A stretch of DNA of 64,000 nt from Lepidodermella squamata (lineage: Eukaryota > Animalia > Gastrotricha), in assembly GCA_047495785.1 (NCBI GenBank), contig JBLDXI010000054.1, positions 2,108,001-2,172,000 of the forward strand, read 5' to 3'. Within the stretch, counting starts at the first letter, position 1; each line of letters begins with the position of its first letter. The notes under the pieces are model-generated. The model was given only the letters and a program-made list of their open reading frames with translations, was not told the origin of the DNA and ran no database searches. A program made the translations under genes and the position numbers. Below, in pieces: positions 3,824-61,734 of this stretch.

Positions 3824-3853
3824 GAATCTCGCCTTCGTTCTTTTGTCGCTAGT

Positions 3854-22588: not shown

Positions 22589-25500
22589 TCAAACCACCGC
22601 TGCCGCCGGACTCGCGCACAACTGCGCGAATTCCGGCTTCGCCGCTAACACAGTCGCGCCGACGTAGGACGCGTGATAGGCGAAGGGTGCCCGGTTGACG
22701 CGCACCTGTATCGACGTATTCGCCGGCAACAACCGCACCAAGTCCGCCTCGAGGCGCTGCGCCAGCCCTGGCAAGCACGTCGGGCCGCCGCTCAGAATGA
22801 TATTGCGGTACAACTCGCGCCTGTTGTCGATCGGACACGCTTTAATGGCGTTGAAAATCAACTGAGCGAGCGAGGGCGAGTCGTGGCATATCGCCGGGTT
22901 GACGACCCTCTCCGCCGCATGGAAGCGGCCCCAGTCGGCGGCGAACACGGTGGGCAGGCCGTCGGGCAGCTCGCAGTCGGCTAAATCGACGGTGGTTTGG
23001 AATTTGTCGCGGTTCTGCAGGCACACGTTCAAATCGCGCTCGTAGTTGTCCGAGATGAAGCACAGTTTCTCGGCGAGGTAGCGCACGATCAGCAGTTCCT
23101 TCGCGCTCGAGAACGAGCAGATGTGCTTGCCGGGCAGCGTTGCGTTGAACGCTTCGAATAGATCGTGCCCGCCGTAGGGCAGCGTTAGACAGCCGGCGAT
23201 CATCGCGCACCCGGCGACTACCGGCATTATCGAGGTGTGCTCGCCGATGTGCACGACCACCGCGTCGGTTAGACCGTAAGCGTATAGCACGAGCGGTTCT
23301 TGCGTCGAGATGAAGTGTTTGGGGAAACCGAGGCTTCGCAGAACTGCGGTTAGTTGTGAGCGTTCGGTGGGGCCAATCTCGAACGGAATTGTGAGCAATA
23401 GCTGGAAAAATTAGAAAAAGTTAGAAAAAAAGATATTTTAGATTTTAGAGTAAAAATATGAAAAATTAACAAAATTCAAAAATTCGGAAACTCGAAAATC
23501 GAATATTTTTCTAAATCACGACTGAAATTGAAAAAATCGGTTTTCAAAGCAATTTTTCATAGATTAGCGGACAATCCCGCAAAAAACATTTGTTTGAATT
23601 TGATGATCAGGAAAATTTGACCCGACAATTTTGGTTGAATCAAAAATTTAAACACCAACACTTAAAACCTTGAAAATCCAAAATAATTCTACAAAAAAAT
23701 TGAATTTCCATCAATAAATGGCACATAGGGCAAAATACAGCGTGTCCTAGTAACGCAATCAAAGAAAATACAGGGAAATGGGTGCAGAAATGAAAAAATG
23801 CGAGACGAAGTGACATCTCATGGCCAATTAGAAAATTTCAAAAATAACGAGAATGGGTACCACGCATGTCACTTGTTAATGGGATTGAAAAAGTCCGGAG
23901 AAATTTGGTCCAATCGGGTAAAATACCGAAAATTACCGGACCGGTTACCATCGGGTTTTTTCGGGTTTTCTCCGGTCAATTTTTCATTTCTTCGGTAAAA
24001 TCGCGGATAAAAAAATGAAATATTCTCTTAGTATGTTTGATTGGGCGGTTCCTCTGGCCAATTTAGTTGAATTTCCTACAAAAAGTTGCCAAATTAAAAA
24101 ATAACTGCGCTTCAATTTTTTCGATTAACCCCGAAAGAAAAAGAATTTCATCCAAATTACATACTCAAATCGAAAAATTGAACTTTGAAATGAAATTTAA
24201 AAAAAATCAGATTTAATTTGTCCGCCCTATATTATCGATGGATTATCGAAATGAGAGGTAAATTGAAGAGTTAAATGTTCGCCATTCTTACCGAGTAAGC
24301 ACTAGGTTCTGAAATGCCAAGATTGTCGATGACCCGGCTGAGCAGGCCAGTTAAACACGCGAAGTCTGTTACGGCTCGTTCGCCAGAAATCGACATTTTG
24401 AAGGCATGCATCAGGCTGACTTTGTGGTCGTTATCAACCGGCGCAAACGAATCTTCGCCAAATCGAGTCCTTGAGAAAATAAAAATAATATAGGCGAAAT
24501 TAACAAAATTGACTTTTGTTAAAGAGATTTTTCAATTTAATTTGTGAAAAAAATCTTGGTAGCTAAATTCAAAATCTTTAAATTTATTCACAAAAACGGG
24601 TTGAGACTCGAAATTAATGCTTTAAAAATTTTTAAAAATTCAAAGATTTCAATTTCAAATTTTATTTTAATTTGTAAATTTTTAATTGATTTTCAATTTT
24701 AATTGAAATTTTTTAATTTAAAGAGCATACTCGATAGTGTGGCCGTCTCGAAGTGAAATTTTCGCGCCAGTCGCCGGGAAGAACACATCCGGCAAGGACG
24801 GGCGGTTCCTAAGCAGGCCGGCCCGCAGCGACGACTCGCCAATATCAACAACGAGCACGTTTTTCGCGCTCAAATCCTCGAAATTGCCATCCGCCGCAAC
24901 AGGTTGCATGTAGCGAAACATCTCCGGCAGCTCCAAAACCTGAGTAGAAAACGCGTTCAGCCACTGGTCACGCTCGTCCGGCGACGAGCATCGAAACGCA
25001 TTCCACCGGCCGTTCGGCTCTTCGACCGTAAACATGTCCGGCTCGACGAGAGCACACACCCTACCGCCGGCTAGATGCGACTGCAACGTCCGGTAGTGCT
25101 CGATAGAATCGGTCGATTTCTCCGAGACATACATCATGCCATCCCTTAGCCTCACGTATTTCCGCCGCCACGTTTTAACCGTAGTCGCCGTCTGCCGGCC
25201 GCCCTGCATCAACCGGTCCAGGTAGCCCTCCATGTTCGAAAACGAATGCTGCTGCTGTTTATTCGGGTCATTTTCCGCGTTCCCATCCAAATCGGTGATG
25301 GCGTAAATTTTGCGAACCAACGGCCTCGCGTCCCACGCCGCGAAGTTGACCTTTTTCGGCGGCAGCGCCACCTCGGCCGTGTGGAACTTGCCGATCGGCG
25401 AGTTATGCGTGTCGTCCATCAACATTCTAGCGGCTTCTTTGTGCGGAATGTTGCTTGCTGGAAGTTCGTGGGTAGTCGCAGTCGGAACCGGCGATGACGA

Positions 25501-39166: not shown

Positions 39167-39350
39167 AAACTAACCTAAGGTCGGACACAGCTGCGATCAC
39201 GAAGGCGGCGGTCCCGGTGTGAGGTGGCGCCATTGCACGCGGGGGTGACTCCAACGGCGCTGCTGAGCACTGCATCCTCGCGGCACTGTCCCGGGTTTGG
39301 GCCTGCACTTTATGCGTTTGGTGGTGTTTGCGTTCGCGCAAATCCACCCT
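39167..39350 (+). ncRNA. Divergent U1 snRNA (variant 5' end AAACUAACCU)
   Basis: SL1 GGAC..GCTGC-GATCACGAAG-GCGGC..GTCC (U1-70K loop), SL2 loop CATTGCAC (U1A site), helix H AGGTC/GGCCT, Sm-position ACTTTATG, and SL4 GGTGG..TTTGCG-TTCG-CGCAAA..CCACC, all in canonical U1 order. Confidence 0.88.
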
Positions 39351-39597
39351 TGAAGTGAAGAAAAATATTCCAAACCAAGAGAAAATCGATTAAAAATAAT
39401 ACCAAGCAGAACCAATCTTTTGATCAATAACGAATTTCCAGGAATAATTCCAGAAAAATTATTAAAAAAATTTAAACAAAATTTAAATATTAAATTATTG
39501 TCGCTATTTATTTTCAAACAAATTAAAATAAATAATGAAATATTTTCAGCTCTTGTTGAATTTTTATCAGCAGCAAAATTGAAATTATAATAAATTT

Positions 39598-40251
39598 TCA
39601 AGCCGATGTTTCCAGCAGCAGTTTGAATATTTTCCCCAACTGCGTATTCGATCCTACAGCTAAAACTATCATTCGCCCAGTTCCGGACAGCACTTTCGAC
39701 GCGGCAATAAGCGTTCGGTCATGCTCCAGTGTTTTATGCACAGTTTCACGGTCATCCTCGCCGGTTGCCACGCTTTCGTCCACCTTCAAATCGCCGCTAC
39801 ACTCAACGAGCCAGCCGTCGGCCGGCAAATTATCGCCGGCCTTAAATAGGCAAATATCACCGACGACTATGTCGCAGAGTGACACAAAAACCAGCTGACC
39901 GCCTCGCAAGACTGGATAGCGCGTGTCCAACTCGGCCTGTAACTGCGCCTGTTGCATTTGTTGATCCACCCTAAACTCCGACAGGGTGTCCGAGGCGAAA
40001 CACGCGAAAATTCGAGCGAAGCAGCGTTCGCATCGCGATGTATACAACATTTCCGCCGTTGATGGCATGGTGTTTTTGCCGAAAAGTTTGCGCCGAGTTT
40101 GAATGTCAACAGCCGAGCCGGGAATGCCGTTTTCTAGCGAAGTGTTGAGCCGCCGAGCGATTTCTTCGACGGAATTCTGGCTTAAACCACTCTTTGTTTC
40201 TAACATTCGAGATATTTCACTTACAGTTACGACAAAAGGATTATCAGTCAT
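39598..40251 (-). CDS. Soluble PMCA-derived protein 2 (N-terminal cation-ATPase segment plus actuator domain, no TM helices)
   Basis: RLNTSLENGI..RRKLFGKN, then directly VLRGG..IVVGDI..GDNLPADG..DLKVDESVATGED..SGTGRMIVLAVGSNTQLGKIFKLL and a stop. Intronless and intact. Confidence 0.85.
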   Translation of the reverse strand: MTDNPFVVTVSEISRMLETKSGLSQNSVEEIARRLNTSLENGIPGSAVDIQTRRKLFGKNTMPSTAEMLYTSRCERCFARIFACFASDTLSEFRVDQQMQQAQLQAELDTRYPVLRGGQLVFVSLCDIVVGDICLFKAGDNLPADGWLVECSGDLKVDESVATGEDDRETVHKTLEHDRTLIAASKVLSGTGRMIVLAVGSNTQLGKIFKLLLETSA

Positions 40252-40300
40252 ATTATTTACAAAAAATTCTACTGTTTGTGAGAAAAATTTGAACCTAATG

Positions 40301-40942
40301 CTATTTTTCCAATCGATGATTTCCTAGCAATTTCATTATTTTTCCCACCGTAGAATTCGCTCCGACGGCAACAACTAACATCCGCCCGGTACCGCTGACA
40401 ATCTCACTTCCGGCCATAATCCACCGATCCTCGGTCAAATTTTTCGCAACATGTGCCTCATCACCAGTGATAGGCGCTTCGTTGATTCGCAGATCGCCGA
40501 TATCCGAAATTAAAATGCCATCCGCAGGTACTTCTTGGCGCGATTTCAACAGACAAACATCGCCAACTACAATTTCGCCTACAGCAATTTCATAGGGCTG
40601 ACCAGCTCGAATGACCGGCCACTTCGACTCGGTTTCCTTTCGCTTCATATTGGCTCGATATTCTCGCTCCACTCGATGGCTTTGCGAAAAACACGACAAG
40701 ATTCGCGAAAGAAAGTCATCTGAATTTTCATCTTGCAGCAAGGTATTTTTCCCGAATATTTCCTGCCGTAATTTTAGATCGTCCGAGTCGTTGGATAAGC
40801 CGAATTGTAGTGAGGTTTTCAATTTTTTCGCCAAATTTTCAATCCCGCCGAACTGGGTTTGCAATCGCTCGACGCCTTGTTGGCCTTTAAATTCTTGGAA
40901 CTGCGAAATTTCATCTGAGCTAACGCCAAAGTGACGAGACAT
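40301..40942 (-). CDS. Soluble PMCA-derived protein 1 (N-terminal segment plus actuator domain, no TM helices)
   Basis: FGVSSDEI..FGGIENLAKKLKTSLQFGL..RQEIFGKN, then VIRAG..IVVGDV..VPADG..INEAPITGDE..SGTGRMLVVAVGANSTVGKIMKLLG and a stop. Confidence 0.85.
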   Translation of the reverse strand: MSRHFGVSSDEISQFQEFKGQQGVERLQTQFGGIENLAKKLKTSLQFGLSNDSDDLKLRQEIFGKNTLLQDENSDDFLSRILSCFSQSHRVEREYRANMKRKETESKWPVIRAGQPYEIAVGEIVVGDVCLLKSRQEVPADGILISDIGDLRINEAPITGDEAHVAKNLTEDRWIMAGSEIVSGTGRMLVVAVGANSTVGKIMKLLGNHRLEK

Positions 40943-41452: not shown

Positions 41453-42306
41453 CCGTCAGTTGGGGCTATCCGGACGGCGTTTGCATTTTTACCCGTTTCA
41501 GAAGGTCCTCATTCCAATGGAAACAGGATTCCGAAATGATACATAAATATTCAATTCAAGTATTACTGATATGCTGTGTTCAGTGGTCGAGTGGCTTTGG
41601 ATGTGATTCTAGAAAGTATAGCAAAGTACGAAACGAGGGTTCGAGTCCACGCCGGGGAGAAATTTTTTCCCCAAAATTTTCGAATAATTTTTATGCACAA
41701 GGATTTAAGCAATATAAAGCACTGGTTTTTAGTTGAATTATTTGTCAATTATAGTCGTAATTAATTATTTGGCAATGTCGTAGTCCAGTAAACTAGTCTT
41801 TTGCAGCCTTTCCAGCTTATTCAAAAATTAAAATATAAATGAAGTAAAAGTCCGCTTTAATCAGCCAGGAACGCTTGAACAACGCAGTTCATTAGCATAT
41901 TAAAATGGCAGACCGAATAGCCCCTCAAATTCACTTTTTGATGGGGCTAATCGGACGCAATTAATTAGACAAAAGTATGAGTCGGATCGGGGCGTTTTCA
42001 ATTTTCCTGGGTGCCCTAGCGTCTGTAGATTCAGGAAAAATTGGGCGCGGGTCCGGCAAAATTCTCTTCGGGTCCAGGTAATTCAACGCAGAACTTCAAC
42101 TTACACCTTAAAGGTAAGCCCATATCTTCACAACCACTCACTCTCAGGTCGTGAAATTTCTACGGCATGTGGGTCGTCTTTCCACCTAACTCCGTGCACA
42201 ATTTCATTTCCAACGGCCAGGTAGTTTTTGAGCCATGCTCATTCTCCTGTTTGCATGAACATTCGTCCGAATAGCCCCAATGACCCGGATTACCCCCAAA
42301 TGACGG
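41453..42306. mobile_element. Tc1/mariner (pogo-like) non-autonomous element
   Basis: TA|CCGTCAGTTGGGG...CCCCAAATGACGG|TA, with internal repeats of GGGGCTA(T/A)(C/T)CGGACG at 41462, 41943 and 42264 (inverted). Confidence 0.8.
41580..41668 (+). other. tRNA-derived Pol III promoter segment inside the pogo-like element
   Basis: A box AGTGGTCGAGTGG, B box GGTTCGAGTCC (41638-41648) and a downstream T6. Confidence 0.6.
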
Positions 42307-43145
42307 TAACGACGTTTATATTCTGGTATTACTAAATGTCTAAAAATGCTGAGAATGGAATACAGAATAAAATAGAAATAGTCTGAGGCGATTTCAGACT
42401 CTCTTCGACCTTCGGAATTACCATAGTTCGATTTTTGATGACTTTGTAGGAATTTTAAATAATTTTTGAAATTAACCACATCGAGGGAATTTTTCATTAT
42501 TTATCCGCGAAACAGACTTTGGGAACGAATCTGGGATGGGCAATATCGTGAAATCGGTTGTAGTCGGTCGCGATATTCTGCGATCGTTGAATGTCGCCGA
42601 TGTCATAGTACTCCGGCAGCCGGAACCATTGTCAACAAAATAGTTGAAGAACATGCTGCCTAGCATGCGCGTCATCTAATGCCAGCAATGCGTGCGCCCG
42701 TTTATTTTAGGGGACTATGAAAAAATTACGCGGGAGATTGGGAAGTGCCGGCGTTTTGCCGGCGAGCTTTCGAGGGCTGAATGATGACTTTACTTCGCCA
42801 AATCGTCATTGTGTGGCATATATACTATATACATATATTGTGAGCGTTTAATGGTCTCTCGCAAAAAATGATCTCAACTGCTGGCGTGAATTTGTACATT
42901 TCATGTTTATTACATTGGATTAATCTGTAAAAAAACCGAGAATAAAATCACACCATTGTCAGCGGTTTGTTTATATTCATTGTTTCAAGGTGACTCCAGA
43001 GAGCACCACGGGGTTAACCGATAATCAGATTTCGATAATCGATATCGATTGATTATCGATTTTTAGAAACGCCTAATCAGAAAAATTATCTAAATTCATC
43101 CAAATTTATTAGGGTTAGGACTTCGTGAACAAAAGGGAGAAAGAT

Positions 43146-44688
43146 TCATTGTTCATCATTTTTTGACAGTTTTTTCTTGTTCCTTCGACGGCTGAACGAC
43201 GCCCTGAGACGCCTGATACCAACGTTCATAACTGAGGACAGATTTTCGTAGTCTGACTGGCTTGGCCAAGGCTTACGTCGAAACAGCTCTTGCATTTGTT
43301 GAAGTTGAGAACGCGTGAACAATTTTCTCGCTCCTTTCGATCCGATCTTTCCTAAGGGTATGCCTCTCAGGATGTGTCTTACCTTAGCCGGATTCAGGTT
43401 TGTAACCGATGCTATGTGTTCAATCCGTTTGGCGTAGAGCCTGCAGGGAATTGCAGCTTCTTTTTCGAGGATTGCAATTTGCCAGGGCTCTAATGCCCAT
43501 TCACGGCGCTCTCCACCGCCAGTGTTCATTTTACGCACCTACGAATGATTATTTCAGATAATGTAAATGGTATAGATTCAACAAATTACATATGGTGTAT
43601 ATTATGGCTTATGCTTACGTTTTCGAGAGTCACTTTCTCGCACAGGCGAGTTTTCGTTTGACATCTTCTCCTTTGAAACCAATTTGCTACCAAGGACCTT
43701 TCCAGCTGAAGAGCTTTAGCTAGCTCATCTTTACGCGGCGTTGTAGGCGCTACATTCACAGCGAATTCCTAATTGATAAACAATCCAATTTTAGAGATTG
43801 AACAATGAATAAGACATTCACTTTTTCGAGAATTTTAATCTGCTCTTCGTTTAGAGTTACTTTCTTCCTTCGGCAAGCACGGTCTCGAAATCGCCTTCGA
43901 CTTACACTAAACCAATTTCTGATGTGTTTTACTGACAAGCCTGTCTTCAGGGCCAGATTTTCCACTTCTACCTTTTCCGGGTGAGAGTTGGCAAGATAAG
44001 CGCCCCGCAATATGTCGATCTGCTCCCCATTCATCCAACGCTTCTTGCGCTGAATTATTTTCGGGTCCCGATTCCTGAGAAGCCAACGATAAACTTTCTC
44101 TCGATTTGCGGACATTTCTCTGGCCACGGAGTAACTGAGTTTTCCTAGCGGAATATCCCTAGTTTTCCTCCACGCTTCCAAGTGGCGGTGCAATTCTTCA
44201 ATTTGCCAGCTTTCGAATTTACTATTTGTTCGTGTTGTCACGGTGAAAGAAGTTCGGCGTTGCTGCTCTCGGTATATTGCGCGCCCTTTAGAGCCTAATG
44301 TTCCGCGTTTACGAATAAACCACTTGCGAACTTTCAACTCCTGTAATCCGGTGACAGCTGCCAGTTCCGCAATATCTTTCACTTCAGGATAGGCGTTGGT
44401 TACGAATGCGTTGGCAAGTATTGCCTGTTGCACTCTAGATTTAATGTGCTTTCGAGGTTTAGCCATTACAACCGCCATGTCGGTGTAGCGATGATGGTAG
44501 ACCCATCGATAGACACGCTCCTTATCCTCTCCGATTTCTTCAGCTAAACGTTCGCTTATTACGGAGGGTTTCTCGTTACCATTTATCTGCCAATCTTCAA
44601 GCCTCTTTCGCATTATTGCAAGCTGCCAAGGCTCAAATCCAAGCCGTAGGCCATACTTCTTCCGCAGTCCTTCCTTGCCAACAGTCAT
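43146..44688 (-). CDS. Multi-homeodomain protein, copy 1 (469 aa, 7 homeodomain-like repeats)
   Basis: Exons 44688-43822, 43768-43619 and 43538-43146 (all phase 0). Repeats include NAYP..ELAAVTGL..KVRKWF, HP..LALKTGL..IRNWF and ELAKALQL..VANWFQRRR. Confidence 0.85.
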
Positions 44689-45487
44689 TTCTTATAATAA
44701 AAAATAAAACCTGGGGAAACCTAGGTCAATAAACAATGCTGTTATACGACATCTCACAAAACGCGACAGAACGAATTGTTTCAACTTGTGAAATAATTTT
44801 TGTCCATTTTTCATCCATTTTGAAGACGAAGTAGCTTTGGCTGTTAATTATATCGGCATCTAGCGTTAGCTTGCTCGTGCGGTGAAAGCCCATTAACTCG
44901 ATGCGCACTTCATACTTAAAGGCAACTTCGGCTTCGGCAAAACGGTTCAACCAAATTACTTAGTCATCAAATTCTTCTAGAGGAATGAATGCTTTATTTT
45001 TGCCCTTATTTAAGGGACCTCCTTTTACCAGAGCCAAGTAGCGGAGCCAGATTCGCATCTTAGCGGAACCAAATTATGAAATTTTCTGGTGGCCTGAAAT
45101 ATCTTTTTGGGTATTTCTTGGTTGCCAAGATTCGCCGCTAAAAAAATTCAACATTAAATTCAGCGTAACATTCTCTTTATAAGACAGAGGATCCAATTCA
45201 GAACTCTTCGCCTCAAATTAGGCTTGCGCAAATTGTTGTGCAAAACACGGCCATGCGGAAGTTTCGGATACATGAGGCGGTTGCAAGCTTCACGAGGCGC
45301 AGATCTAGCGGCGCTGACGGACTCAAATGTAGACACTCCTGAGAGATTTTCTTGGCAAGGCACTGCGTTGAAGCCAAATTGGCATAGCAAGCCGAAAAAA
45401 TCACAAATGTTTTTAACTAGAAAATATATCCATATAAATTAGATGATTAAAATGTACTTTGCGAATGAAAGGGACGAAGACTAATTT

Positions 45488-45868
45488 TCAATCATTGTTT
45501 GAATCTTTTCTGGTCCTCCGATTGCAAAACCGCTTTCTAAGACGCCCGATGCCAACATTCACAACTGAGGAAAGATTTTCGTAATCTGACCGGGATGGCC
45601 AACGCGTATGCCGAAACAGTTCTTCCATTTTTTCAAGTTGAGAAAACATGAGAAAACGCGGCGCTCTTGAACCAATATTTCTTGAGGACTTTCCTCGCAG
45701 GAAGCTACCTACTTTCGCCGGAGTCAGGTTTGTAACCGATGCCAAGTGTTCAATCCGTTTGGCGTAGAGCCTGCACGGAATTGCAGCTTCTTTTTCGAGG
45801 ATATCAACTTGCCAAGGCTCTAATGCCGAGAAACGGCGACCTCTTTCCCCGGCGTTCAATTTACGCAT
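45488..45868 (-). pseudogene. Isolated last exon of a multi-homeodomain copy
   Basis: Nearly identical to 52378-52758. Upstream exons are absent and replaced by unrelated sequence at about 45875-46913. Confidence 0.7.
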
Positions 45869-46913
45869 CTACGCCGATTTTCGTATCCTTTCATCCTTTT
45901 CATCTTTTCATCATTTCCAACTTGGAACTTATACAACAATAAGCCGCGGTCAACAAGTGCAAGTCTTTAGTTAGACGGAGAGCCAGAGTAATTTTAAAAA
46001 GTGGAAACAGGAGAAAAGCTGCTTAGGTTTGATGCGCGGGTGGGAGAGCTATCCGGTCCGATTAAACCGAAATTTTGAATACCTCTTATAAAATACAAAT
46101 AAATTAGACAATAAGTACTTATTGGATAAAAACGATTTGTGGAGAACTTTTCTCAATTAGAAAAGCGTGTAGGCCCTCTCGCAGCCATCATCGCAGACTA
46201 ATACAAGCAAAACAAGAAAAATTAGGCACAAAATGATTAATTGAAGGTTGAAATTAGGTTGAATTCAGGTAGAGTCATTGCCCCATTGACGGCTGAGAAT
46301 TTTCGAAAGAGATGGGCATCTAAGAAAGCGATTGTTTGCTAAAATTACATTCTAAAAGTCTATATAATACTTATTAGCCTAGACTGAGGAAAATTGAGCC
46401 GCCCAAGTTCTGAAAGCATCAAATTCGTGCCAACGTGCATGGGCTTTCACCTAAATCATCACGAATAAAACTCATAAGTCGAAAAAATGCAAGTCAGCTA
46501 ATCTCTCGTCGAGGTCCGATATTATTTGAATTTTTGAAAAACCGGACCTCGCCGAGGAAATGGTCGACGGCATCCCGGGTTACTACCCGGATTTATCGCG
46601 CGCGTTGTTAAGCGAAATCCCCACTTAGTGGGGAGAGTCACTGGTTACAGCCGCATCCCGGTTCATGTTCCAGGTTTTCCCTGTTCGACTAAATTTGAAT
46701 GATAAGGCCAAGCCGGGCCGGAGACCGGCTCACGCTAGTATCGGTTCTCGGGCTAGGCTTTCCAATATTGTATCGGGTTTGCACTGGCTTTTGGATTGGT
46801 TTGCCGTTGCGAGACCCGCTACTTCTGGCGTAACGATTCGAGGACTAGGTTTTCTAACATTGTCCCGGGCTTCGCTCGGCTTTCGTAAAAACGAAAACCA
46901 TGTAAAGTTTTAA

Positions 46914-47110
46914 GAGTGTATTCCTCGCAGGAAGTGTATTACTTTCGCCGGAGACAGGCTTGTAACCGATGCTTCTGTTTAGAGGATCGCAATTTGCCAA
47001 GGCTCTAATGCCAAGAAACGGCGACCTATGTCACCGGCGTTCAATTTACGCATCTAAGAACGCTAAATTGAGAAGTTACATGGGTTACGACTGAGCCTTA
47101 CGTTTTCGAG
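46914..47110 (-). pseudogene. Deleted fragment of the multi-homeodomain exon 2 end, intron and exon 3 start
   Basis: Matches the exon-3 start (ttacgcatct...caaggctctaatgcc) with internal deletions. Confidence 0.65.
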
Positions 47111-47308
47111 AAATGACCGTCCGAACGCCGAGAAATCGCAAGGGTAGTTGGTTCGGAATTCGGAATTCGGTCGCTTGGTAGGGCTCTGCGTTGAAGCGAG
47201 AGCAATATAGCAAGCCGAAAGCGTAGAAGTTTTAGCTAAGAAATATGTATAGGTATCTAAATTTATTATGACTAAGAAATGTTCATCATGAACAGAAGGA
47301 AGAGAGAT

Positions 47309-48827
47309 TCACTGTCCATCATTTTTTGTCGTTTTTTTCCTGTTCCTTCGATTGATAAACCACTCCATGAGACGCCTGATACCGATATTCACAACTGATG
47401 AAAGATTTTCGTAATCTGACTGGGTTGGGAAAGGTTCACGTCGAAACAGCTCTTGCATTCGTTCAAGTTGAAAACGTGTAAAAAAATTTTTGTTCGCTCC
47501 TTTTGATCCGATCTTCCCTGAGGATATGCCTCTCAGAACGCTCCTTACTTTAGTGGGAGTGAGTTTTGTCAGCGATGCCAAATGAACTAGCCGTTTTGCA
47601 TAGCGCCTGCACGGAATAGCAGCTTCTTTTTCGAGAATCGCAATCTGCCAGGGCTCTAATGCCCAATTACGGCGCTCTCCGTCAACGGCATTCAATTCAC
47701 GCATCTGCGAATGATAAATTCAGAAAGAAAATGGTAATAGATGACTTGAGCTTACATTATCAGCAGTCACTTTGCCGCAAAGGCGAGTATTCGTTTGAGT
47801 TCTTTTCTTTTGAAACCAATATGCTATCGTGGATTTTTTGAGCTGAAGAGCTTTTGCCAGTTCATCTTTACGCAGCCTCGTGGGCGCTACATTCAAGGCG
47901 AATTCCTAATTGATAAACAATCAAATTTCTAAAATTGAACAACTAAAATAAGACATTCACTTTTTCGAGGAGTTCAATCTGCTGTTCGTTAAAAATTACT
48001 TTCGCCCCTCGGCATGCATGGTCCCGAAATCGCCATCGACTTCCAGTAAACCACTTTTGGATGCTCTTTACTTTCAAATCTGTCTTCAGGGCAAGTGCTT
48101 CCACTTCCCCCTTTCCCGGATAACGATTGGCTAGAAAAGCCCTCCTCAATATGCCGAACTGATCCTCATTCATCGGGCGCTTCTTGTGTTCGATTATTTT
48201 CGGGTTTCGATTCTTGAGAAGCCATCGATAAACTTTTTCTCGATTTGCGGACATTTCTCTGGCCAAGGAGAAACTAAGTTTACTCAGCGGAATATTCTGA
48301 GTTTTCTTCCATGCTGCTAATTGGCGCTGCAATTCTTCAATTTGCCAGTTTTCAAATTTCACATTTGCTGGAATTGCATCTGCAACTGAATTTCGGCGCC
48401 GCTGATCTTTGAATCTTGCGCGCCCTTCAGAGCCTAATGTTCTGCGTCTACGACTACAAAACCACTGACGAACCTTCAACTCCTGTAATCCGGTGACAGC
48501 TGCCAGTTCCTTAATATCTTTCACTTCAGGATAGGCGTTGGTTTCGAATGCGTTGGTAAGTATTTCGTGTTGCGCTCTAGATTTGTTATTTGGCGATTTA
48601 GCCCTTACAACCGCCATGTCGGTGTCGCGACGGCGTTTGACCCAACGATAGACACGCCCCGTATCCTCCCCGATTTCTTCAGCTAAACGTTTGCTCATCA
48701 TGCAGTAGTCCTCGTTACGGTTTTTCTGCCAATCTTCTAGTCTCTTATGCATCACTTCAAGCTGCCAATGCTCAAATCCAAGCCGTGGGCTAATCTTCTT
48801 CCGTAGTTTTTCTTTTCCAGCACTCAT
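47309..48827 (-). CDS. Multi-homeodomain protein, copy 2 (intact)
   Basis: Exons 48827-47961, 47905-47756 and 47704-47309, with the same intron positions as copy 1. Confidence 0.85.
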
Positions 48828-49881
48828 TTGCTAAAATGGAATCATAAGCTAGAAACCTAGAACAGTAAAAAGAATGCAATTTCCCGAAACCTCACCACAC
48901 TCGAAGCAATGAATGACCTGACACTCATGCCGTTGTCATACTGCCAAAAATTTTCGAATTTTCAGTTAAAAATTCCTCCTTTCAGCTCAGCCGGGCCAGA
49001 CAACAAAATGAGAATTTATCCCACTGTTTCGTTTATTTTGAAAGGTTTTGGAGCCTGCTTTAGCGGAAATTCTTCAACATTTTCTCGCTTCGCTCGGTTT
49101 TTAGTTGTAATTCAGCAAAGAAATGTTTTCCATCCCTGGCAGCTCCGGAATCCAAGATCACACCCTTGCTCACGCTCTATTCAATCCATTTTGAAGCTGT
49201 ATCCTAAAAATTTCCTAAAAAAATTGAAGGCTTTAAAAACTTTGAGAGCATGCAACGCGATTTGCCCCACCTCAGATTCCAGAGTGGTACTAATGGGAAT
49301 GATGCAGAATTTCATGAGAGTAAGACTTTCCTATGGTAAGCTTTAACGCTGCGTTGAAATTTCTGGCTTCACTGGAGCAAGGGTCCTCCTTTACCAGAAC
49401 CAAGTCGCGGAACCTTTCCAGTGGCCTGAAATCAATTCTTGGGTATCTCTCATGTGTCAAGATTGCCCGCAAAAAATCACCATGATTAAATTGAGCGTAA
49501 CATTCTCTTTAAAAATTGTCGACCTTTTTCGAACGCTTGCTGTTCCTTAGCCACGATGTTCCCGGGCTCATGTTTTGACCATCATCAGTCCGAACCCATG
49601 TGTAAGCTAACAAACCAGCTCATTCCCTATACCGTTACCGAGCCATCGCTTTTCGAAGGTAAAAGAGGAAAACATGAAAACCTCTCGACGGTGCCCTAAA
49701 TCTGCATAAAAGCCCCACTTTTGAACCTATACTGTGTAGGAAACCTTACCCTACTAGCACAAAAGTTGAAAACAACGAAGCCGAAAACAACGAATTTCAC
49801 AAAATAATGAGCCTAGAAAATATATACATTGAAATGATTCAATTTAATTAGCGAATGAAAGGAAGTAAGATTCATTGTAAT

Positions 49882-51274
49882 TTATTGTTTGATGCTTTCA
49901 AGTTGAGAAGGCATGAAAAAATGTTTCGCTCCTTTTGATCCGATCTTTCCTAAGGGTATGCCTCTCAGGATGTGTCTTACCTTAGCCGGATTCAGGTTTG
50001 TAACCGATGCTATGTGTTCAATCCGTTTGGCGTAGAGCCTGCACGGAATCGCAGCTTCTTTCTCGAGGATCGCAATTTGCCAAGGCTCTAATGCCAAAAA
50101 ACGGCGACTTTTTTCACCGACGTTCAATTTACGCATCTAAGAACGTATCAAATCGCATCAAATCAAGAACTAACATGGGATACGATTGAAGCTTACGTTT
50201 TCAAGAGTCACTTTGTCGCACAAGCGAATATTCGATTTATCTCTTCTCCTTTGAAACCAACCTGCTAGCACGGACCTTTTGAGCTGAAGCGCTTTAGCAA
50301 GCTCATCTCTACGCTGCACTGTAGGCGATACATTCACAGCAAATTCCTAATGGACAAATCCTTCAATTACAAATAATGGACAGCGATGAGTCATTCACTT
50401 TATCGAGAAGTTCAATCTGCTCTTCTTTCAAATTGATTTTATTCCTTCGACTTGGATGGTCTCGAAATCGGCATCGCATCCAGCAGAACCACATTTTGAT
50501 GCGTTTTATTGCCAAACCTGTCTTAAGGGCCAGACCTTCCACTTCCGCCTTCCCCGGGGAAGAATTGGCTAGAAAAACGCCCCGCAGTACGTCGAACTGC
50601 TCCTTAGTCATCGGACGCTTCTTGTGCGCCACCATTTTCGGGTCCCGATTTCTGACAAGCCAACGATAAACTTTCCGTCGATTTGCAGACAGTTCTCTGG
50701 CCACTGAGTAACTGAATTTCCACAGCGAAATGTCCTGAGTTTCCCTCCAGGCTTCCAAGTGGCGCTGCAATTCTTCAAGGTGCCAGCCTTCGAATCTCGA
50801 ATTCGCTGGAGTTGTCTCTGCAAATGAATGTCGGCGTTGTTCATCTTGATACATTGCGCGCCCTTCGGAGCCTATTGTTTCGTGTCTACGACGAGTAAAC
50901 CACTTGCGAACCTTCAACTCCTGTAATCCGGTGACAGCTGCCAGTTCCTTAATATCTTTCACTCCAGGATAGGCGTTGGCTTTGAATGCGTTGGCAAGTA
51001 TTTCCCGTTGCGTTCTAGATTTGTAATTTTGTGATTTAGCTCCAACAGCCGCCATGCCAGTGTGGCAACGGCAGTAGACCCAACGATAGACACGTTCCTT
51101 ATCCTCTCCGATTTCTTCAGCTAAACGTTTGCTCATTATGCAGAGTTTCTCATCGAACTGGTTATTCTGCCAATCTTCTAGCCTCTTCTGCATCACTTCG
51201 AGCTGCCAAGGCTCAAATCCAAACCGTATCGAAGGGCTACTCTTTTTCCGCAGTCCAGCCTTACCAACACTCAT
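49882..51274 (-). CDS. Multi-homeodomain protein, copy 3 (7th homeodomain lost by deletion)
   Basis: Exons 51274-50399, 50346-50197 and 50136-49882. Exon 3 stops at MPSQLESIKQ. Confidence 0.75.
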
Positions 51275-51639
51275 TTGTTAAAATGGAAACCTATTAGATC
51301 AGTAAAAATGCAATTTTATGACATCTGACCACACTTGAAGCATTGAATTGTTTCAACTTTTGATATAAGGTTCGTCCTTTTCTGACTTTTTTTTAATTTT
51401 TTATGTTAATTTTATCGACATCTTGCATATCCAGCTTTTACCAAGAATAAGCCGCTCGTGCGGTGAAAGCCAGCTCACTTGAAGCGCATTTCAAACCTGA
51501 GGGAAATTTTGGTATCGGCCTTAACAGTTCAACCAAAATACTTCGAGCCATCAAATTCTTCTAGAGGAATGAATGTTTTTTTTTTGCCCATATTTTAACG
51601 TCCTTCTTTTACCAGACCCAAAAAGCGGACCCAAATTGT

Positions 51640-51795
51640 GGAGTTCTCTGGCCACTGAGTAACTGAATTTCCACAGCGAAATGTCCTGAGTTTCCCTCCA
51701 GGCCTCCAAGTGGCGCTGCAATTCTTCAAGGTGCCAGCCTTCGAATCTCGAATTCGCTGGAGCCTATTGTTTCGCGTCTACGACGAATAAACCAA
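51640..51795 (-). pseudogene. Short duplicate of copy-3 exon 1 (about 50691-50900) with an internal deletion
   Basis: Near-identical gagttctctggccactgagt...aattcgctgga followed by gcctattgtttcg. Confidence 0.7.
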
Positions 51796-52377
51796 TTGAT
51801 GGAGTTCTGACAAGTTCGGTTGAAAATCGAGGTCGGTGTGGTCGTTTCTTGAGGCTGCATCAAATGTTAGGCTGCTGTAAAATCCGTATGCAGTCGATGA
51901 TAGGCCATGGATCTAGCGACTAATACTCCTACGGCCGGGAGGCGAGAGTAGGTTTCGGATACATGGGGCGGTTGCGACCTTCACGAGGCGCTGATCTAGC
52001 TGAGGGACAGTAATGTCGACACTCCTCAGAGATTATCTCGGCATGGCATTGTGCAGAAGCCGAAGAGGCATAGCAAGCCAAAACCCCGAAAGATTTCAGA
52101 AATGTAATGACTACAAAATATAGAATTGTCGCCAAAAATATAGGTCGAGTCGCTATGACAATTCGATATTTTACGGTATAACATTCGTAAATCGTTCATA
52201 TCTGAACTCGCCGCACTCGATTTACTCGTCGCAACTCGCCTCCGGCTCGTCACGACTCGTAAATCTCGGGCGGCTCCGTACAGATATAAACGTTTTACTC
52301 ATGTCATACCATACAAATATATACATATAAATTGAATGATTAAAATGTACTTCAATGAAAGGGAGGGAGACTAATTT

Positions 52378-53825
52378 TCAATCATTGTTTGAATCTTTTC
52401 TGGTCCTCCGATGGCAAAACCACCTGCCGAGACGCTTGGTGCCAACATTCACAACTGCGGAAAGATTTTTGTAATCTGACCGGGATGGCCAACGCGTACG
52501 TTGAAACAGCTCTTCCATTTTTTCGAGTTGGGAAGGCATGAGAAAACGCGGCGCTCTTGGTCCGGTCTTTCTTGAGGACTTTCCTCGCAGGAAGCTACCT
52601 ACTTTCGCCGGAGTCAGGTTTGTAACCGATGCCAAGTGTTCAATCCGTTTGGCGTAGAGCCTGCACGGAATTGCAGCTTCTTTTTCGAGGATATCAACTT
52701 GCCAAGGCTCTAATGCCGAGAAACGGCGACCTCTGTCCCCGACGTTCAATTTACGCATCTAAGAACACTAAATCAAGAAATTAGTGATACGATTGAGGCT
52801 TACCTTTTCGAGAGTCGCTTTGTCGCACAAGCGAATATTCGATTTATTTCTTCTGCTTTGAAACCAACGTGCTATCGCGGACCTTTTGAGCTGAAGCGCT
52901 TTAGCAAGCTCATCTCTACGCTGCACTGTAGGCGATACATTCACAGCAAATTCCTAATTATGATGCATACTTCAAATTACAAATATTGAACAACGAACAC
53001 GACATTCACCTTTTCGAGAATTTTAACCTGCTCTTCGTTTAGAGTTACTTTCCGATGAACTTGATAGTCTCGAAATTGCTGTCGACTTCCGCAAAACCAT
53101 TTTGTGATGTACCGTACTGGCAGACCTGTCTTTAGGGCCAGCTCTTCCTCTCCCGCCTTTCCCGGGTAAGGATTGGCTAGAAAAGCGCTCCTCAATGTGT
53201 GAAACTGTTCCTCATTTGCCTTACACTTCTTGGGCATGATCGGGTCCCGATGCCTGAGAAGCCAACGATGAACTTTCCCTCGATTCGCGGATATTTTTTT
53301 AGCAACGGACATGCTAAGTTTGCATAGCTTAATATCCTGCGTTTTCGACCATTCTTCCAAGTGGCGTCGCAATTCATCAATCTGCCAACTTTTGAATTTC
53401 CCCTCTTGGTAAATCGCGAACCCTTCAGAGCGTAAGATTCCGCGTCTTCGAGAACAAAACCACTGACGAACCTTCAACTCCTGTAATCTGGTGACAGCTG
53501 CCAGTTCCTTGATATCTCTCACGTCAGGATATGCTTTCGCTTCGAATGCGTTGACAAGTATTTCCTGTTGCTTTCTAGATATGTAATTTCGAGATTTAGT
53601 CTTTGCAACCGCCATGTCAGTGTCGCGACGCCGGTTGAGCCACAAATAGACACGCTCCACCGTCTCTTCGATTTCCTCAGCTAAACGTTTGCTCATGAAG
53701 TAGAGCCCCTCGTTACGGTTTTTCTGCCAATCTTCTAACCTCTTCTGAATCACTTCAAGCTGCCAAGGCTCAAATCCACACCGCGGGCTTTTCTTCTTCC
53801 GCGATTTTTCCTTGCCAACACTCAT
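52378..53825 (-). CDS. Multi-homeodomain protein, copy 4 (intact, shorter linker)
   Basis: Exons 53825-53010, 52953-52804 and 52758-52378. Confidence 0.85.
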
Positions 53826-56034: not shown

Positions 56035-57832
56035 TTCCCTTATTGTCCTCTTTCCAAATAAAATACACAAAATAACTCTCTAATAATACTATGGAACAAG
56101 AGGCGCGTGCTAGTAAGATGTATCCATGCTCATCATATTGATGGGGCACGTAAGAGACGGAGAGGGAGATGGCGAGGGTTTTATCAGTGGCAGGGTACTT
56201 TTCGATAGCAGAGAGAAACACATTACAGAGAATTGCGGTAAGAGTAAAAAGGAGAAAATATGGCGGAGACAACGGTAGCTAACGGAGGAATTTTATAAAA
56301 AAGCAAGGCAGCCTGTAGAGGAAAGAAAAACAACATGAAAGAAGAGGTGAAGAAAGAAGAGGGAAGATATAGGAGAGAAGATGGGAGAAAAGAGAATAAC
56401 AGCCCAGCCTATGAAGTCGGGCAGAGGACCACGAGGGAGTCTGTTGCTCAACAGCACGAAGGGCGAGCGCGGAGGGGGGCGGGCCATCATGCGGACGCTC
56501 TCGAGGTCCTCGCGCAGCGGCAGGACAAACTGAGCGGCTTTGGCGACATAACGGCGCTGGCACTGTTCCAGAAACCGAGGGACACTCGGGATGCGGCAAC
56601 GAGATTCCAACTCCGACACGCGGACCCTGTCGTCCCGACGAATGTGTGGAGCATTGCACGCAGGCTATCATTTTGGATGACTGCGAGACGATTAAGCTGT
56701 TGCTTCGAGGCGGTAGCCAGACAAATGGTCCCATAAGACCAGCACGAACGGACCAGAGTCAAGTAAAGGGTGCGGCGCCAGCGGCGCGACAGCCCAGGGG
56801 TGAACATGAGATGTTTGAAAAAAACCAGATTTCTGCGGCAACGGTCAGAGACCTTGTCCACATGAACTTTCCACGTCAGTTTAGGGTCCAAGTGAACACC
56901 GAGAACTCGTAACGACTCGACTTGCGGAATTACGGCTCCGTTGAGCCTAACATCAACGGACGCGTTACCAAAGGGCATAACTTCGCTCTTCGCGGGATTA
57001 AACTTCTGGCGCCATTTCTTGGCCCAGTCGGAAATACGAGTGAGCTCCAATTGGAGGCGACGCTGAGCAGCAGGGAACGTGCCACCCTCGCCGACGACAG
57101 TTAGATCGTCCGCGTAGGCCTGCAGCAACGTGCCATCCACGCTTGGGGCGGACAGCAAATCGGCGGTGTACAGAATGTAGAGAAGCGGCGACAACGGGGA
57201 ACCCTGCGGCACCCCGCAATGGACGACGACTTGACGACTCAGCGAGCCCGCCACGCGAGCTTGCAGACGACGGTCGCGAAGATAGTCGGCCAACCAGCCG
57301 ACCAAATTTCGCGGGAGAGGCAGCTTGGCCAGCCGGCGTGCCACACGGAATCGTAGGCCGCCTGAACATCCAGGCCTGCCACAACAGTCTTCTTGCGCAG
57401 GGAGCGGTTGACGTGGACGCGATGAACGATGCGAAGTGGGACATCTGGCGCGGAATGGTGCGGACGGAAGGCAAACTGATTTCTCAGGGAGAAGGTGTTG
57501 ACTTTCAAGAAACTGGGTCATCCACCGAGCCACGATCGAGCTTGGCGTCAGTCGGCAGCAAGGAGATGGGACGCTGTGACGAGACATGGTTCTGCGGCTT
57601 GCCGGCCGTCGGGATAGGCACCACAACCGCTTCTTTCCACGCTTTAGGCACGTAACGACTCCCAAGAGACATGTTGAATAGCCGACGAAGGTGGGTTTGC
57701 AGGACAGGGCCACCCCACTTCAGGTAGATGTTTTGAATACCATCCAAGCCAGGGGCCTTGAAGGACTTCAAACGGCTAACAGCATCAGCGAGCATCCGTT
57801 GACCGACAGAAAACTCGCCGAGAGCGGGCACG
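56035..57832 (-). mobile_element. 5'-truncated, frameshifted Jockey/I-like LINE (RT to 3' UTR)
   Basis: KAPGLDGI, QRPISLLP, AYDSVWHAG, GVPQGSPLSPLLY, QAYADD and KFNPAKS spread over several frames, followed by a pyrimidine-rich 3' UTR. Confidence 0.9.
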
Positions 57833-58911: not shown

Positions 58912-60268
58912 TTTCGCTCCGCCATGCTGCAGCCCGACTCGGCCTCACGATCTTGCCCTCGCCGAAACCCACTCGCCTTCACCTCGACACTGGCACCTTG
59001 TCAACCCTCGATGTTTGGGTCCTTAACGACGCCGCAATGCGCCTGCTGCGCGGCGGTGTGATTGTTGGCGATAGGTACACCAGCGATCATTATACGACCT
59101 CTATATCTGTCGATTTTCCAGTTGGCAGACGCCCACCTGCATTTGACCATCCCGCTCCTGACCCGTTCCCGCGCTTCGATGTCTCCCGCGCTGACCGTCT
59201 CGGATTTTCGCGTACGCTGATCGAGAAGTTGATTGCGATTCCTATGCCTGTTCCCGGTGACCCGTTCCCGCGTCTTGTCGAGTATCGCCGCTCCGTCACC
59301 CGCGCTGTAGCCGACTCCCGTGACCGTCACCTACCCGTCTGCGAGCCAGGGCAGCTGCGGAGGCTTGATATTATGAGCCAGGAGATGCGTCAGATCATCA
59401 AGGAGAAGCGCATTCTGGAGAGAGCCCTGGGCGACCATGTCGACCGCGACCTGTGCGTTCTTCTCAAGGCCCTTGACGCCCGTTTTCGTGATGCGAAGCA
59501 AGCCCATCAACTCCGCCGAGATGTCGCCAACCTTCGAATGGCAGAAGCTCTGTCAGCTCAACGCCGCTACCGCGAAGCCTGGGAGCGACTCAACCGTCTC
59601 GACAAGCGCCGCCCGCAGCGCTCGACTGGTCCTATGAAGCTTGATGATGGTCGCGTCCTCGAGCCGTCCGTCGAGCTCGCTGATGTCCTTCTCGATCAGT
59701 TTGTGAAGCCCATGACGCCATTCACCGACCCTGCTGCCGACGCCTATCTGAAGCAACAGTGGGCTGACATCGAACAGTTCGTCGCCTCTGATCCCGACCT
59801 ACAGCGCACTGACCGCCTTCAGCTACCAGCCCCGGGCGAGTTCTCCGTCAGTCAGCGCATGGTTGCCGATGCTGTGTCACGCCTCAAGCCGTTCAAGGCT
59901 CCCGGGTTGGATGGTATCAGCCCCGTCTTCAACAAGTGGGGTGGACCGGTGCTGCAGCGCCACCTCTGGCACATGTTCAGCCTGAGCCTCGGATCGCGCT
60001 TCGTACTGCCCGACTGGAAGGAAGCGGCTGTGATACCCGTGCCGAAAGCTGGCAAGCCGTTAGGAGCTGTCTCATCCCAGCGGCCGATCTCGTTGTTACC
60101 CGTCGACGGCAAGCTGTTGGAGTCCGTCGTGGCGCGTTGGTTGGGCGAGTTCTTGGAGAGCCACCACGCCCTGCCCGACAACCAGTATGCGTTCCGCGCG
60201 CACCACTCTGCACCCGATGTCCCTTTACGCGTCGCCCACACCGTTCACCTTGCCCGTTCTCGACACCG
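58912..60268 (+). mobile_element. Internal fragment of a related Jockey/I-like LINE (end of APE endonuclease to start of RT)
   Basis: PTR...STLD...SDHY (APE C-terminal motifs), KAPGLDGI, WKEAAVIPVPK, QRPISLLP and NQYAFR. Truncated at both ends. Confidence 0.88.
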
Positions 60269-61734
60269 AAAACATGAGACGTACCAGGACGTGGCGCTTC
60301 GATTTAAACGCCTGATTTTTGTGTTATTTCTTAATAAGGTCCAAAGGTCGTTGTGGCTAAAAATAACCTCATTCAGCGCGGGAGACATCGAAGCGCGGGA
60401 ACGGGTCAGGAGCGGGATGGTCAAATGCAGGTGGGCGTCTGCCAACTGGAAAATCGACAGATATAGAGGTCGTATAATGATCGCTGGTGTACCTATCGCC
60501 AACAATCACACCGCCGCGCAGCAGGCGCATTGCGGCGTCGTTAAGGACCCAAACATCGAGGGTTGACAAGGTGCCAGTGTCGAGGTGAAGGCGAGTGGGT
60601 TTCGGCGAGGGCAAGATCGTGAGGCCGAGTCGGGCTGCAGCATGGCGGAGCGAAAAGGATCAGTTTGACATACTGAGGAGCACTTTTCTAGCCAATCCTT
60701 TGCAGTAGCCTAATTGTTGTTTCGGGTAGCTGAACGATTGAACCTGTGGTGCTCTCTGGAATCACCTTGAAACGGGAAATAATAAACAAACCGCTGACAA
60801 TGGTGTGATTTTATTCTCTATTTTACAGATTAATCTAATACGATGAACCTGAAATGCACAAATTAAATTCGGGCATTTGATTTTGCGCATGCTAGGGGGC
60901 ATGTTTCTTCAGATATTTTGTTGGCAAAGGCTCCGGCTGGTGGAGGACTATGACATCGGCGACATTCAACGACCGCAGGTTGTCGTCGACAGCGATAGAC
61001 GAGTCAACGTGATTGACGGCGGCGACAGCGGCGGCGATGCTTTGGCGGGAGACAGATGCGGTGCGGAGTCGGCGGGCAGATTTCCCTTTGTCCTAGAAAA
61101 CAAAAAATAGTATTTTATTTATGAAACCAAAATTCGAGAAACTTGCTTGTTTGTGTTTTTGAAACTTGCTTGATTTATTCCATGAAATGTATGGGTTCTG
61201 ACTTGTATACTGTATACTCTGTCTAAGGAACAGAAACACCCAAACAACAATTTATGGTGGGCGTTTATTTATCTATTTAAAATTTTTATCCAAACAATTC
61301 GAATATCTTTTTAGCGGAACCAAATTGATAGCGAGCGGAACCTAACTTGCTGTAGCGGAACCATAGTCGAAACATGCCGAGAGTCACTTATTGAATAATT
61401 CTACTAACACGAGGCGATGTATGAGTTCTGACTTGTATACTCTGTCTTATAGAGAATGTTACCCTGAATTAATGGTGATTTTTTATAACTATTGCGTTCA
61501 ATCTTGACATCCAAGAAATACCCGAAAGCTTATAAGTATTTCAGACCACTCGCCACTCGCAAATTCCAAAATGTGTTTCCGCTGACAAATCGGGTTCCGC
61601 TACTTGGTTCTGGTAAAAGGAGGACCCTCAATTATAGGCAGAACTAAAGCATCTCGAAGAATTCGATGGCTCGTGGTATTTGGGTTGAACTCCGAAATCG
61701 AAATTCTCTACCTTCGTGCTTCCGATGTGATCCG

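What the first reader, a model, noticed from the sequence alone, without database searches (positions are those of the whole stretch)
39598..40942. Two tandem soluble 'actuator-only' derivatives of a PMCA Ca2+ pump
Seen: two intact, intronless ORFs (213 and 217 aa). Each joins the PMCA-type cytosolic N-terminus (LKTS..GL..R..FGKN) in frame to the A domain (VGD..PADG..E..TG[D/E]..SGxGRM..AVG.N...G.I..LL), with the TM1-TM2 hairpin cleanly missing. Both stop right where the A domain ends, with no GT donor there. The two are clearly diverged from each other yet both keep an open frame and the same architecture. The phosphatase TGES motif has become TGDE or TGED. A Cys-containing amphipathic remnant (FLSRILSCF / RCFARIFACF) sits where TM1 would begin. 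Established: these two segments together form the folded actuator domain of P2-type ATPases. Inference: these are a family of stand-alone actuator-domain proteins that could regulate P-type pumps in trans or have been co-opted for a new function.
Basis: partly seen in the sequence, partly recalled or inferred. Interest (0 to 1): 0.85.

Follow-up and report, generated by a model that had tools for sequence, protein, structure and literature searches.

The report
Stand-alone calcium-pump actuator-domain genes
A small invertebrate (probably a rotifer) keeps two neighbouring genes that each encode only the soluble "actuator" part of a plasma-membrane calcium pump. No protein built this way turned up in any database or paper I searched, and its function and expression remain untested.

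Summary
Two intact minus-strand ORFs lie 49 bp apart: ORF-B (40301-40942, 213 aa) and ORF-A (39598-40251, 217 aa). Each joins a PMCA-type N-terminus directly to the first-loop part of the actuator (A) domain. The TM1-TM2 hairpin (about 65 residues) is absent, and both ORFs stop at the end of the A domain.

Both fold confidently as complete A domains (pLDDT about 90; TM-score 0.76 to mouse PMCA). No other pump sequence exists in the 64 kb window.

The two are sister sequences inside the animal PMCA clade. They share the deletion, the endpoint and a one-residue insertion, so the architecture arose once before an old duplication. Synonymous sites are saturated (pS 0.69 against pN 0.42). Differences seen in other sequencing runs are mostly synonymous (13 of 18; 9 of 9 in one contig). 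These are selected genes, not relics.

No protein with this architecture appeared among 1.8 billion representative proteins, ESM Atlas clusters, metagenome contigs or the literature.

Not shown: transcription (no RNA run held them), orthologues in other species, or function. My best guess, which is inference, is a soluble A-domain mimic that binds partners of the pump's own A domain. The scan did not note this family elsewhere in the genome.

The parts
40301..40942 (-). ORF-B, the upstream gene: 213 aa, PMCA N-terminus + junction + A-domain core, stop TAG
   Evidence: AF2 pLDDT 90.5, pTM 0.87; Foldseek match to mouse PMCA 9gsf, TMq 0.76
39598..40251 (-). ORF-A, the downstream gene: 217 aa, same architecture, stop TGA
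   Evidence: AF2 pLDDT 89.2, pTM 0.84; synonymous-biased variants in other runs
40739..40942 (-). ORF-B residues 1-68: PMCA-type cytosolic N-terminal module (Cation_ATPase_N), ending in FGKN
   Evidence: aligns to PMCA1 residues 26-91
40631..40738 (-). ORF-B residues 69-104: junction where TM1-TM2 is missing. The retained pre-TM1 amphipathic helix (FLSRILSCF) is fused to the cytosolic stalk of M2.
   Evidence: pLDDT 61-71 here; highest pN between paralogues, 0.56
40304..40630 (-). ORF-B residues 105-213: A-domain beta core and last helix, ending at ...KLLGNHRLEK
40457..40468 (-). ORF-B TGDE, in place of the TGES dephosphorylation motif
39754..39765 (-). ORF-A TGED, in place of TGES (Thr-Gly-Glu retained)
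39925..40071 (-). ORF-A residues 61-109: junction with the Cys-rich remnant (CERC, FARIFACF), modelled as one long helix 79-109
40252..40300 (-). 49-nt spacer between the genes. It has no AATAAA and holds a pyrimidine tract plus CAG 22 nt before the ORF-A ATG, a candidate trans-splice acceptor (operon-like pair).
   Evidence: genome-wide SL trans-splicing is known only from scan notes and was not tested here
39507..39512 (-). The only AATAAA in the 3' flank, 85 nt after the ORF-A stop: candidate shared poly(A) signal

Best explanation
These are two real, selection-maintained genes of a lineage-specific family. Each encodes a soluble, or at most peripherally membrane-associated, stand-alone actuator domain derived from a PMCA-type (P2B) calcium pump.

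Origin (inferred): a 5' copy of a PMCA gene was truncated at the exon boundary that follows the A-domain exon. It lost its introns and suffered an in-frame deletion of the TM1-TM2 hairpin. It was then duplicated in tandem long ago.

The pair probably forms one transcription unit, operon-like, with a 49-nt spacer and a single poly(A) signal after ORF-A.

Mode of action (inferred, about 35-40% likely): the free A domain mimics the pump's own A domain. It would bind surfaces that normally dock onto that domain, either the C-terminal autoinhibitory/calmodulin-binding tail or the P/N-domain cleft of full-length or catalytically dead PMCA-type proteins. That would tune pump activity or signalling in trans.

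Shown: the architecture, the fold, the single origin and purifying selection. Inferred: expression, the origin route, the partner and the effect.
For: Architecture and homology. No other pump segment in the 64 kb window. Complete A-domain fold for both ORFs. An isolated A domain is a stable unit, since PDB 2hc8 (a 113-aa A-domain chain of a P-type ATPase) is among the hits. Single origin: the ORFs are sister with 100/96 support on a stem of 0.5, with a shared endpoint and a shared 1-aa insertion, and 8 shared residues that are rare in PMCAs. Selection between paralogues: pS 0.69 (saturated) against pN 0.42, and pN is lowest in the A-domain core (0.37) and highest in the junction (0.56). Conserved pump columns kept: 26 of 39 (ORF-B) and 29 of 39 (ORF-A). 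Variants in other runs: 13 of 18 synonymous (P about 3e-4), and 9 of 9 in one X1 contig over ORF-A codons 59-177 (P about 2e-5). Endpoint equals an intron position in a rotifer PMCA gene. No hydrophobic TM-like window. Single-copy depth, unlike the neighbouring repeat. The PMCA calmodulin-binding tail docks on two internal receptor sites of the pump, one of them described in a 1992 paper as the 'transduction domain': review PMC8835232. Equating that site with the A domain is from my own knowledge.
Against: No RNA run was found to hold either gene, although scan notes report RNA data for other loci of this genome. The one possibly-RNA run (X2) gives only depth 1-9 contigs, and its repeat-to-gene depth ratio looks like DNA. 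No orthologue with this architecture turned up in any database. The dephosphorylation motif TGES is altered in both. One X1 contig across the spacer carries 10 extra letters whose position I could not see. No partner or interaction was tested.
Confidence: 0.55

Rival explanations
1. These are real, selected genes, but the A-domain fold has been co-opted as a binding module for something unrelated to P-type pumps, for example a scaffold or a sensor that uses the Cys-rich junction helix. Pumps are not the target.
For: TGES is changed in both copies. Eight family-specific residues are shared by both ORFs and are rare in PMCAs. The stem and tip branches are long: 0.5, 0.83 and 1.13. ORF-A has 6 Cys, including a CxxC in the junction.
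Against: Most pump-conserved A-domain residues, and the PMCA-specific N-terminal module, are still kept after an old duplication. The CxxC is not shared by ORF-B. No alternative partner is suggested by any search.
Confidence: 0.25
2. These are non-functional relics: a partial PMCA duplicate, duplicated again, that happens to retain open frames and is not expressed.
For: No RNA holder was found. The neighbourhood is rich in transposons and lineage-specific genes. No orthologues were found elsewhere.
Against: Two frames of about 215 codons remain open although synonymous sites are saturated. Fold-critical residues are conserved and both models are confident. Variants in other runs are strongly biased to synonymous changes. 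Constraint is graded by structural region.
Confidence: 0.12
3. They are alternative 5' exons, or pieces, of a larger gene whose remaining exons lie outside the window, or gene fragments carried by a transposon.
For: The tandem same-strand layout resembles alternative first exons. TEs lie nearby.
Against: Each ORF ends in a stop with no donor in its last ~30 nt. Five full-length PMCAs find nothing else in 64 kb, including 39 kb downstream. TM1-TM2 would still be missing. X1 depth over the ORFs is low (about 70-260) against 1500-5000 for the repeat.
Confidence: 0.05

Closest known systems
Actuator (A) domain of plasma-membrane Ca2+-ATPases (PMCA/ATP2B, P2B-type; e.g. PDB 6a69, 9gsf)
   Same: Both halves of the domain are present: the N-terminal module and the TM2-TM3 loop beta core. 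Identity in the core is 30-44%. The fold matches with TMq 0.72-0.76. The ORFs nest inside the animal PMCA clade.
   Different: There are no TM helices, no P or N domain and no C-terminal tail. The two halves are joined by a short helical remnant instead of the TM1-TM2 hairpin. TGES has become TGDE/TGED. Each is a separate gene of about 215 codons.
Truncated SERCA1 splice variants (S1T; Chami et al. 2001, PMC2192035)
   Same: They are natural, non-pumping, truncated derivatives of a P2-type Ca2+ pump with their own biological effect.
   Different: S1T are splice isoforms of the pump gene. They localise to the ER membrane and are thought to form a leak channel. The ORFs here are separate genes with no TM segment.
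Recombinant isolated A domains (e.g. PDB 2hc8/2voy, 113-aa P-type ATPase A-domain chains)
   Same: They show that an A domain is an autonomous soluble folding unit. They are also hit by sequence (E 5.5e-6).
   Different: They are 113-aa chains in the PDB, taken here (from my own knowledge) to be laboratory constructs of a heavy-metal pump. They are not natural genes and lack the P2B N-terminal module.
Catalytically dead PMCA-like gene noted elsewhere in this genome (scan note s1-430940)
   Same: It is another non-pumping PMCA derivative said to be under selection in the same animal.
   Different: It is reported as full-length with dead catalytic residues. I could not see its sequence, and any link to these ORFs is speculation.

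Membership tests
P-type ATPase (P2B, PMCA) as an enzyme | Phosphorylation motif DKTGT in a P domain | tested here: not met
   The ORFs end before TM3. No Hydrolase or Cation_ATPase hit appears in Pfam. No such segment exists anywhere in the window.
P-type ATPase (P2B, PMCA) as an enzyme | Transmembrane ion pathway (TM1-TM10) | tested here: not met
   TM1-TM2 columns are gapped in both ORFs. There is no TM-like hydrophobic window, and the ORFs stop before TM3.
P-type ATPase (P2B, PMCA) as an enzyme | A domain with a TGES dephosphorylation loop | tested here: inconclusive
   The A-domain fold is present. The motif is TGDE in ORF-B and TGED in ORF-A, so T and G are kept in both and Glu only in ORF-A.
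Homologue of the PMCA A domain (descent, not function) | Significant sequence match to both A-domain segments of PMCAs, stronger than to other P-type subfamilies | tested here: met
   PMCA1 E 2e-32 and PMCA2 6e-32, against 5e-9 or weaker for H+-, SERCA-like, Na/K- and heavy-metal pumps. The ORFs nest in the animal PMCA clade.
Homologue of the PMCA A domain (descent, not function) | Pfam Cation_ATPase_N and E1-E2_ATPase above the gathering scores | tested here: met
   Scores are 27.9-29.3 against a cut-off of 20.4, and 69.4-70.9 against 28.1.
Trans-spliced operon (as in nematodes and rotifers) | Same-strand genes about 50-150 nt apart with an acceptor before the downstream gene | tested here: met
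   The spacer is 49 nt and has a pyrimidine tract plus CAG 22 nt before the ATG. The only AATAAA follows ORF-A.
Trans-spliced operon (as in nematodes and rotifers) | Spliced leader on the downstream mRNA, or a polycistronic precursor | not testable with these tools
   No RNA run holding the locus was found, and the single read-laying run gave contigs only.

The most novel reading that the evidence does not exclude
This is a new class of pump regulator: a free actuator domain that works in trans. It would dock on the P/N cleft or capture the autoinhibitory tail of full-length PMCAs, or of the catalytically dead PMCA-like protein in the same genome. An intramolecular domain movement would thereby become a diffusible, titratable signal.
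Probability: 0.2. Interest if true: 0.85.

Novelty: new variant of a known kind. Interest (0 to 1): 0.62.

Why it matters
In every P-type ATPase described, the A domain is a tethered part of the pump whose rotation gates dephosphorylation and ion release. A natural, selection-maintained gene family encoding this domain alone would be a ready-made reagent for a direct question: can A-domain docking, or capture of the autoinhibitory tail, work in trans? It would also be a clear example of a membrane transporter shedding its membrane part to give a soluble protein. The recombinant proteins are small, predicted to be well folded and easy to test against pump ATPase activity. The value is limited for now by the lack of expression data and by the family being seen in one lineage only.

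Tried and rejected
1. Exons of a nearby full-length pump. tblastn with five full-length PMCAs found only the two ORFs in 64 kb. Rejected.

2. Orthologues with the same architecture:
- The word-based search with ORF-B gave one hit, a normal TM-containing fragment.
- The exhaustive HMMER search of 1.84 billion representatives with ORF-A gave a best E of 2e-26 and nothing below 1e-30. The few hits that aligned in a single stretch were inspected. All have TM2, or both TM1 and TM2.
- The metagenome scan gave one ordinary pump at 36% identity.
- ESM Atlas searches by features and by shape gave only pumps or pump fragments of 227 aa or more, and the shape matches were all 437 aa or longer.

3. Rotaria sordida P0037 as a possible orthologue. 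Its locus has a TM1 exon that the gene model skipped, plus TM2 and TGES, so it is a normal pump fragment. Rejected.

4. Exon skipping as the origin of the deletion. In the Rotaria gene both deletion boundaries lie inside exons. Not supported. Only the C-terminal endpoint matches an intron.

5. Expression. Two run searches and one read-laying run gave no run recorded as RNA. X2's nature is unknown. Inconclusive.

6. Seison PMCA locus look-up. Not on record.

7. Literature search for natural stand-alone A domains. Nothing found.

8. The 1992 Falchetto paper could not be fetched.

Full report
WHAT IS THERE

Two ORFs lie head to tail on the minus strand. ORF-B is at 40301..40942 (213 aa) and is the upstream one. 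ORF-A is at 39598..40251 (217 aa). They are 49 nt apart.

Pfam finds the same two families in each, above the curated cut-offs:
- Cation_ATPase_N
- E1-E2_ATPase, but only profile positions about 4-104 of 181

Against solved structures the best matches are human PMCA1 (E 2e-32) and mouse PMCA2 (6e-32). Other P-type subfamilies score 5e-9 or weaker. ORF-B aligns to PMCA1 residues 26-91 and 176-293, so the TM1-TM2 hairpin is skipped.

A 65-sequence alignment shows the same ~65-residue gap in both ORFs. What remains between the halves is the amphipathic pre-TM1 helix (FLSRILSCF in ORF-B, RCFARIFACF in ORF-A), fused to the cytosolic stalk of M2. Both ORFs stop a few residues after the '...KLL' that closes the A domain, and neither has a GT in its last ~30 nt.

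NOT PART OF A PUMP GENE

Five full-length PMCAs searched by tblastn against all 64 kb hit only these two ORFs. Each ORF begins with its own Met at the position where PMCAs begin, and each ends in a stop. Neither has a hydrophobic TM-like window.

THE FOLD

AlphaFold2 with a 65-row alignment gives:
- ORF-B: pLDDT 90.5, pTM 0.87
- ORF-A: pLDDT 89.2, pTM 0.84

Only the junction scores lower (pLDDT 56-75). Foldseek matches the ORF-B model to the mouse PMCA cryo-EM structures with TMq 0.72-0.76. A shape search of the ESM Atlas aligns 196 residues at 2.7 A to Ca-pump models. The sequence hits also include a 113-aa isolated A-domain chain (2hc8), which shows that this domain can stand alone.

ONE ORIGIN, AN OLD DUPLICATION, AND SELECTION

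In a maximum-likelihood tree of the region, ORF-A and ORF-B are sisters (100/96). They sit on a stem of 0.5 with tips of 0.83 and 1.13, inside the clade that holds animal PMCAs: sandfly, frog, tardigrade, Seison and Rotaria. They also share:
- the deletion and the endpoint
- a one-residue insertion, LISDIGDL / LVECSGDL against LIQS-NDL
- eight residues that are rare in PMCAs

Between the paralogues synonymous sites are saturated (pS 0.69) while pN is 0.42. Constraint is graded by region: pN is 0.37 in the A-domain core, 0.42 in the N-terminal module and 0.56 in the junction. Of 39 columns conserved at 85% or more in pumps, ORF-B keeps 26 and ORF-A keeps 29. All nine invariant columns are kept in both.

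Contigs of other public runs carry variant copies. Of the 18 coding differences listed, 13 are synonymous (P about 3e-4 at a neutral expectation of 0.3). One X1 contig over ORF-A codons 59-177 has 9 differences, all synonymous (P about 2e-5). Three caveats apply:
- The tool lists only the best-supported differences.
- X1 may be the sample from which the window itself was assembled (its contigs still carry a second, variant copy).
- One contig across the spacer has 10 extra letters whose position I could not see.

Taken together, relic status is unlikely.

ORIGIN (INFERRED)

In a Rotaria sordida PMCA gene, an intron with donor a|gtacaa lies directly after '...MILKLL'. This is exactly where both ORFs end. 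The same region of that gene has several introns, whereas the ORFs have none. The TM1-TM2 deletion boundaries fall inside Rotaria exons, so exon skipping does not explain the deletion.

The simplest route has three steps:
1. A 5' copy, or a retrocopy of a prematurely terminated transcript, was truncated at that exon boundary.
2. An in-frame deletion removed the hairpin.
3. The gene was duplicated in tandem.

The intron map of this animal's own PMCA is unknown.

GENE ORGANISATION

The spacer has no AATAAA. The only one lies 85 nt after the ORF-A stop (39507-39512). The spacer also carries a pyrimidine tract plus CAG 22 nt before the ORF-A ATG. Scan notes say this genome uses spliced-leader trans-splicing and has operon-like clusters with 54-125 nt gaps. 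They also suggest it is probably a rotifer with TTAGGG telomeres. I did not test those notes. An operon-like pair is plausible but unproven.

EXPRESSION

Expression is not shown. Neither run search found a holder recorded as RNA. X2, guessed to be RNA, has depth 1-9 contigs over 39602-40712 only. Its repeat-to-gene depth ratio resembles that of the presumed DNA run X1, so it may itself be DNA. Other agents report RNA data for other loci of this genome, so the absence here is weak evidence for low or conditional expression.

FUNCTION (INFERRED)

The proteins cannot pump, because they have no P domain, no N domain and no membrane part. What they keep is the A-domain surface and the PMCA-specific N-terminal module.

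In PMCAs the calmodulin-binding autoinhibitory tail docks on two internal receptor sites (review PMC8835232). From my own knowledge, one of those sites lies in the first cytosolic loop, which is the A domain. A free A domain could therefore do one of two things:
- capture that tail, which would activate the pump
- compete with the pump's own A domain at the P/N cleft, which would inhibit it

The T-G-acidic-acidic loop kept in both paralogues fits continued docking near a phosphorylation site, but this is speculative. A catalytically dead PMCA-like gene noted elsewhere in this genome is a possible partner; I could not see its sequence. I put pump-directed mimicry at about 35-40%, an unrelated co-opted role at about 25% and relic status at about 12%.

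COMPARISON WITH WHAT IS KNOWN

By descent these are PMCA A-domain homologues. They fail the defining tests of a P-type ATPase, since they have no DKTGT motif and no TM pathway.

The nearest natural analogues are the truncated SERCA1 splice variants S1T (PMC2192035). Those are ER-membrane splice isoforms of the pump gene, not separate soluble-domain genes.

No protein with this architecture was found in any of these searches:
- 1.84 billion representative proteins
- the 5.8-billion-cluster word search
- metagenome contigs
- ESM Atlas clusters
- the paper library

Eukaryotic genome assemblies could not be searched at the DNA level, so unannotated orthologues in related animals are not excluded.

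VERDICT

The architecture is, as far as I could search, undescribed. Expression and function remain open. I rate it a new variant of a known kind, with interest 0.62.

Noticed in passing
window 39167-39349 (+): A U1 snRNA gene sits about 250 nt beyond the ORF-A stop, convergent with it. Its Rfam score is only just above the gathering threshold (70.6 against 69.5).
   Followed up: partly
window 41454-42318: An ~865-bp non-coding element has 17-nt terminal inverted repeats (41460-41476 / 42264-42280). Its depth in run X1 is about 15-50 times that of the neighbouring genes. One X1 contig joins 41453 to 42318 with 10 other letters between, which looks like an empty-site allele. This is a MITE-like, high-copy, polymorphic insertion about 500 bp upstream of ORF-B. 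There is only one copy in the window.
   Followed up: partly
window 22589-23398 (-): An actin-family ORF (Pfam Actin, E 4.5e-34, partial profile) has GC 61.5% and GC3 80%. That is far above the 45-50% of neighbouring ORFs.
   Followed up: no
window 4969-8289 (+): Ty3/gypsy-type LTR retrotransposon pol, with RT, RNase H and integrase ORFs intact, lies in a 57% GC block. Further RT fragments are at 56487-57713 (-) and 58953-60566 (+).
   Followed up: no
window 2071-3426 (+): A 451-aa ORF has an NB-ARC / STAND NTPase domain (E 2.8e-12).
   Followed up: no
L002 6340-6459 (Rotaria sordida CAJOBD010002601.1): The deposited gene model P0037 (CAF3894464.1) skips an exon that encodes TM1 and is present in the DNA. 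That is why the protein looked as if it lacked TM1.
   Followed up: yes
window 43146-53825 (-): The ORF tested at 43756-44688 within this span has two homeodomain hits.
   Followed up: no
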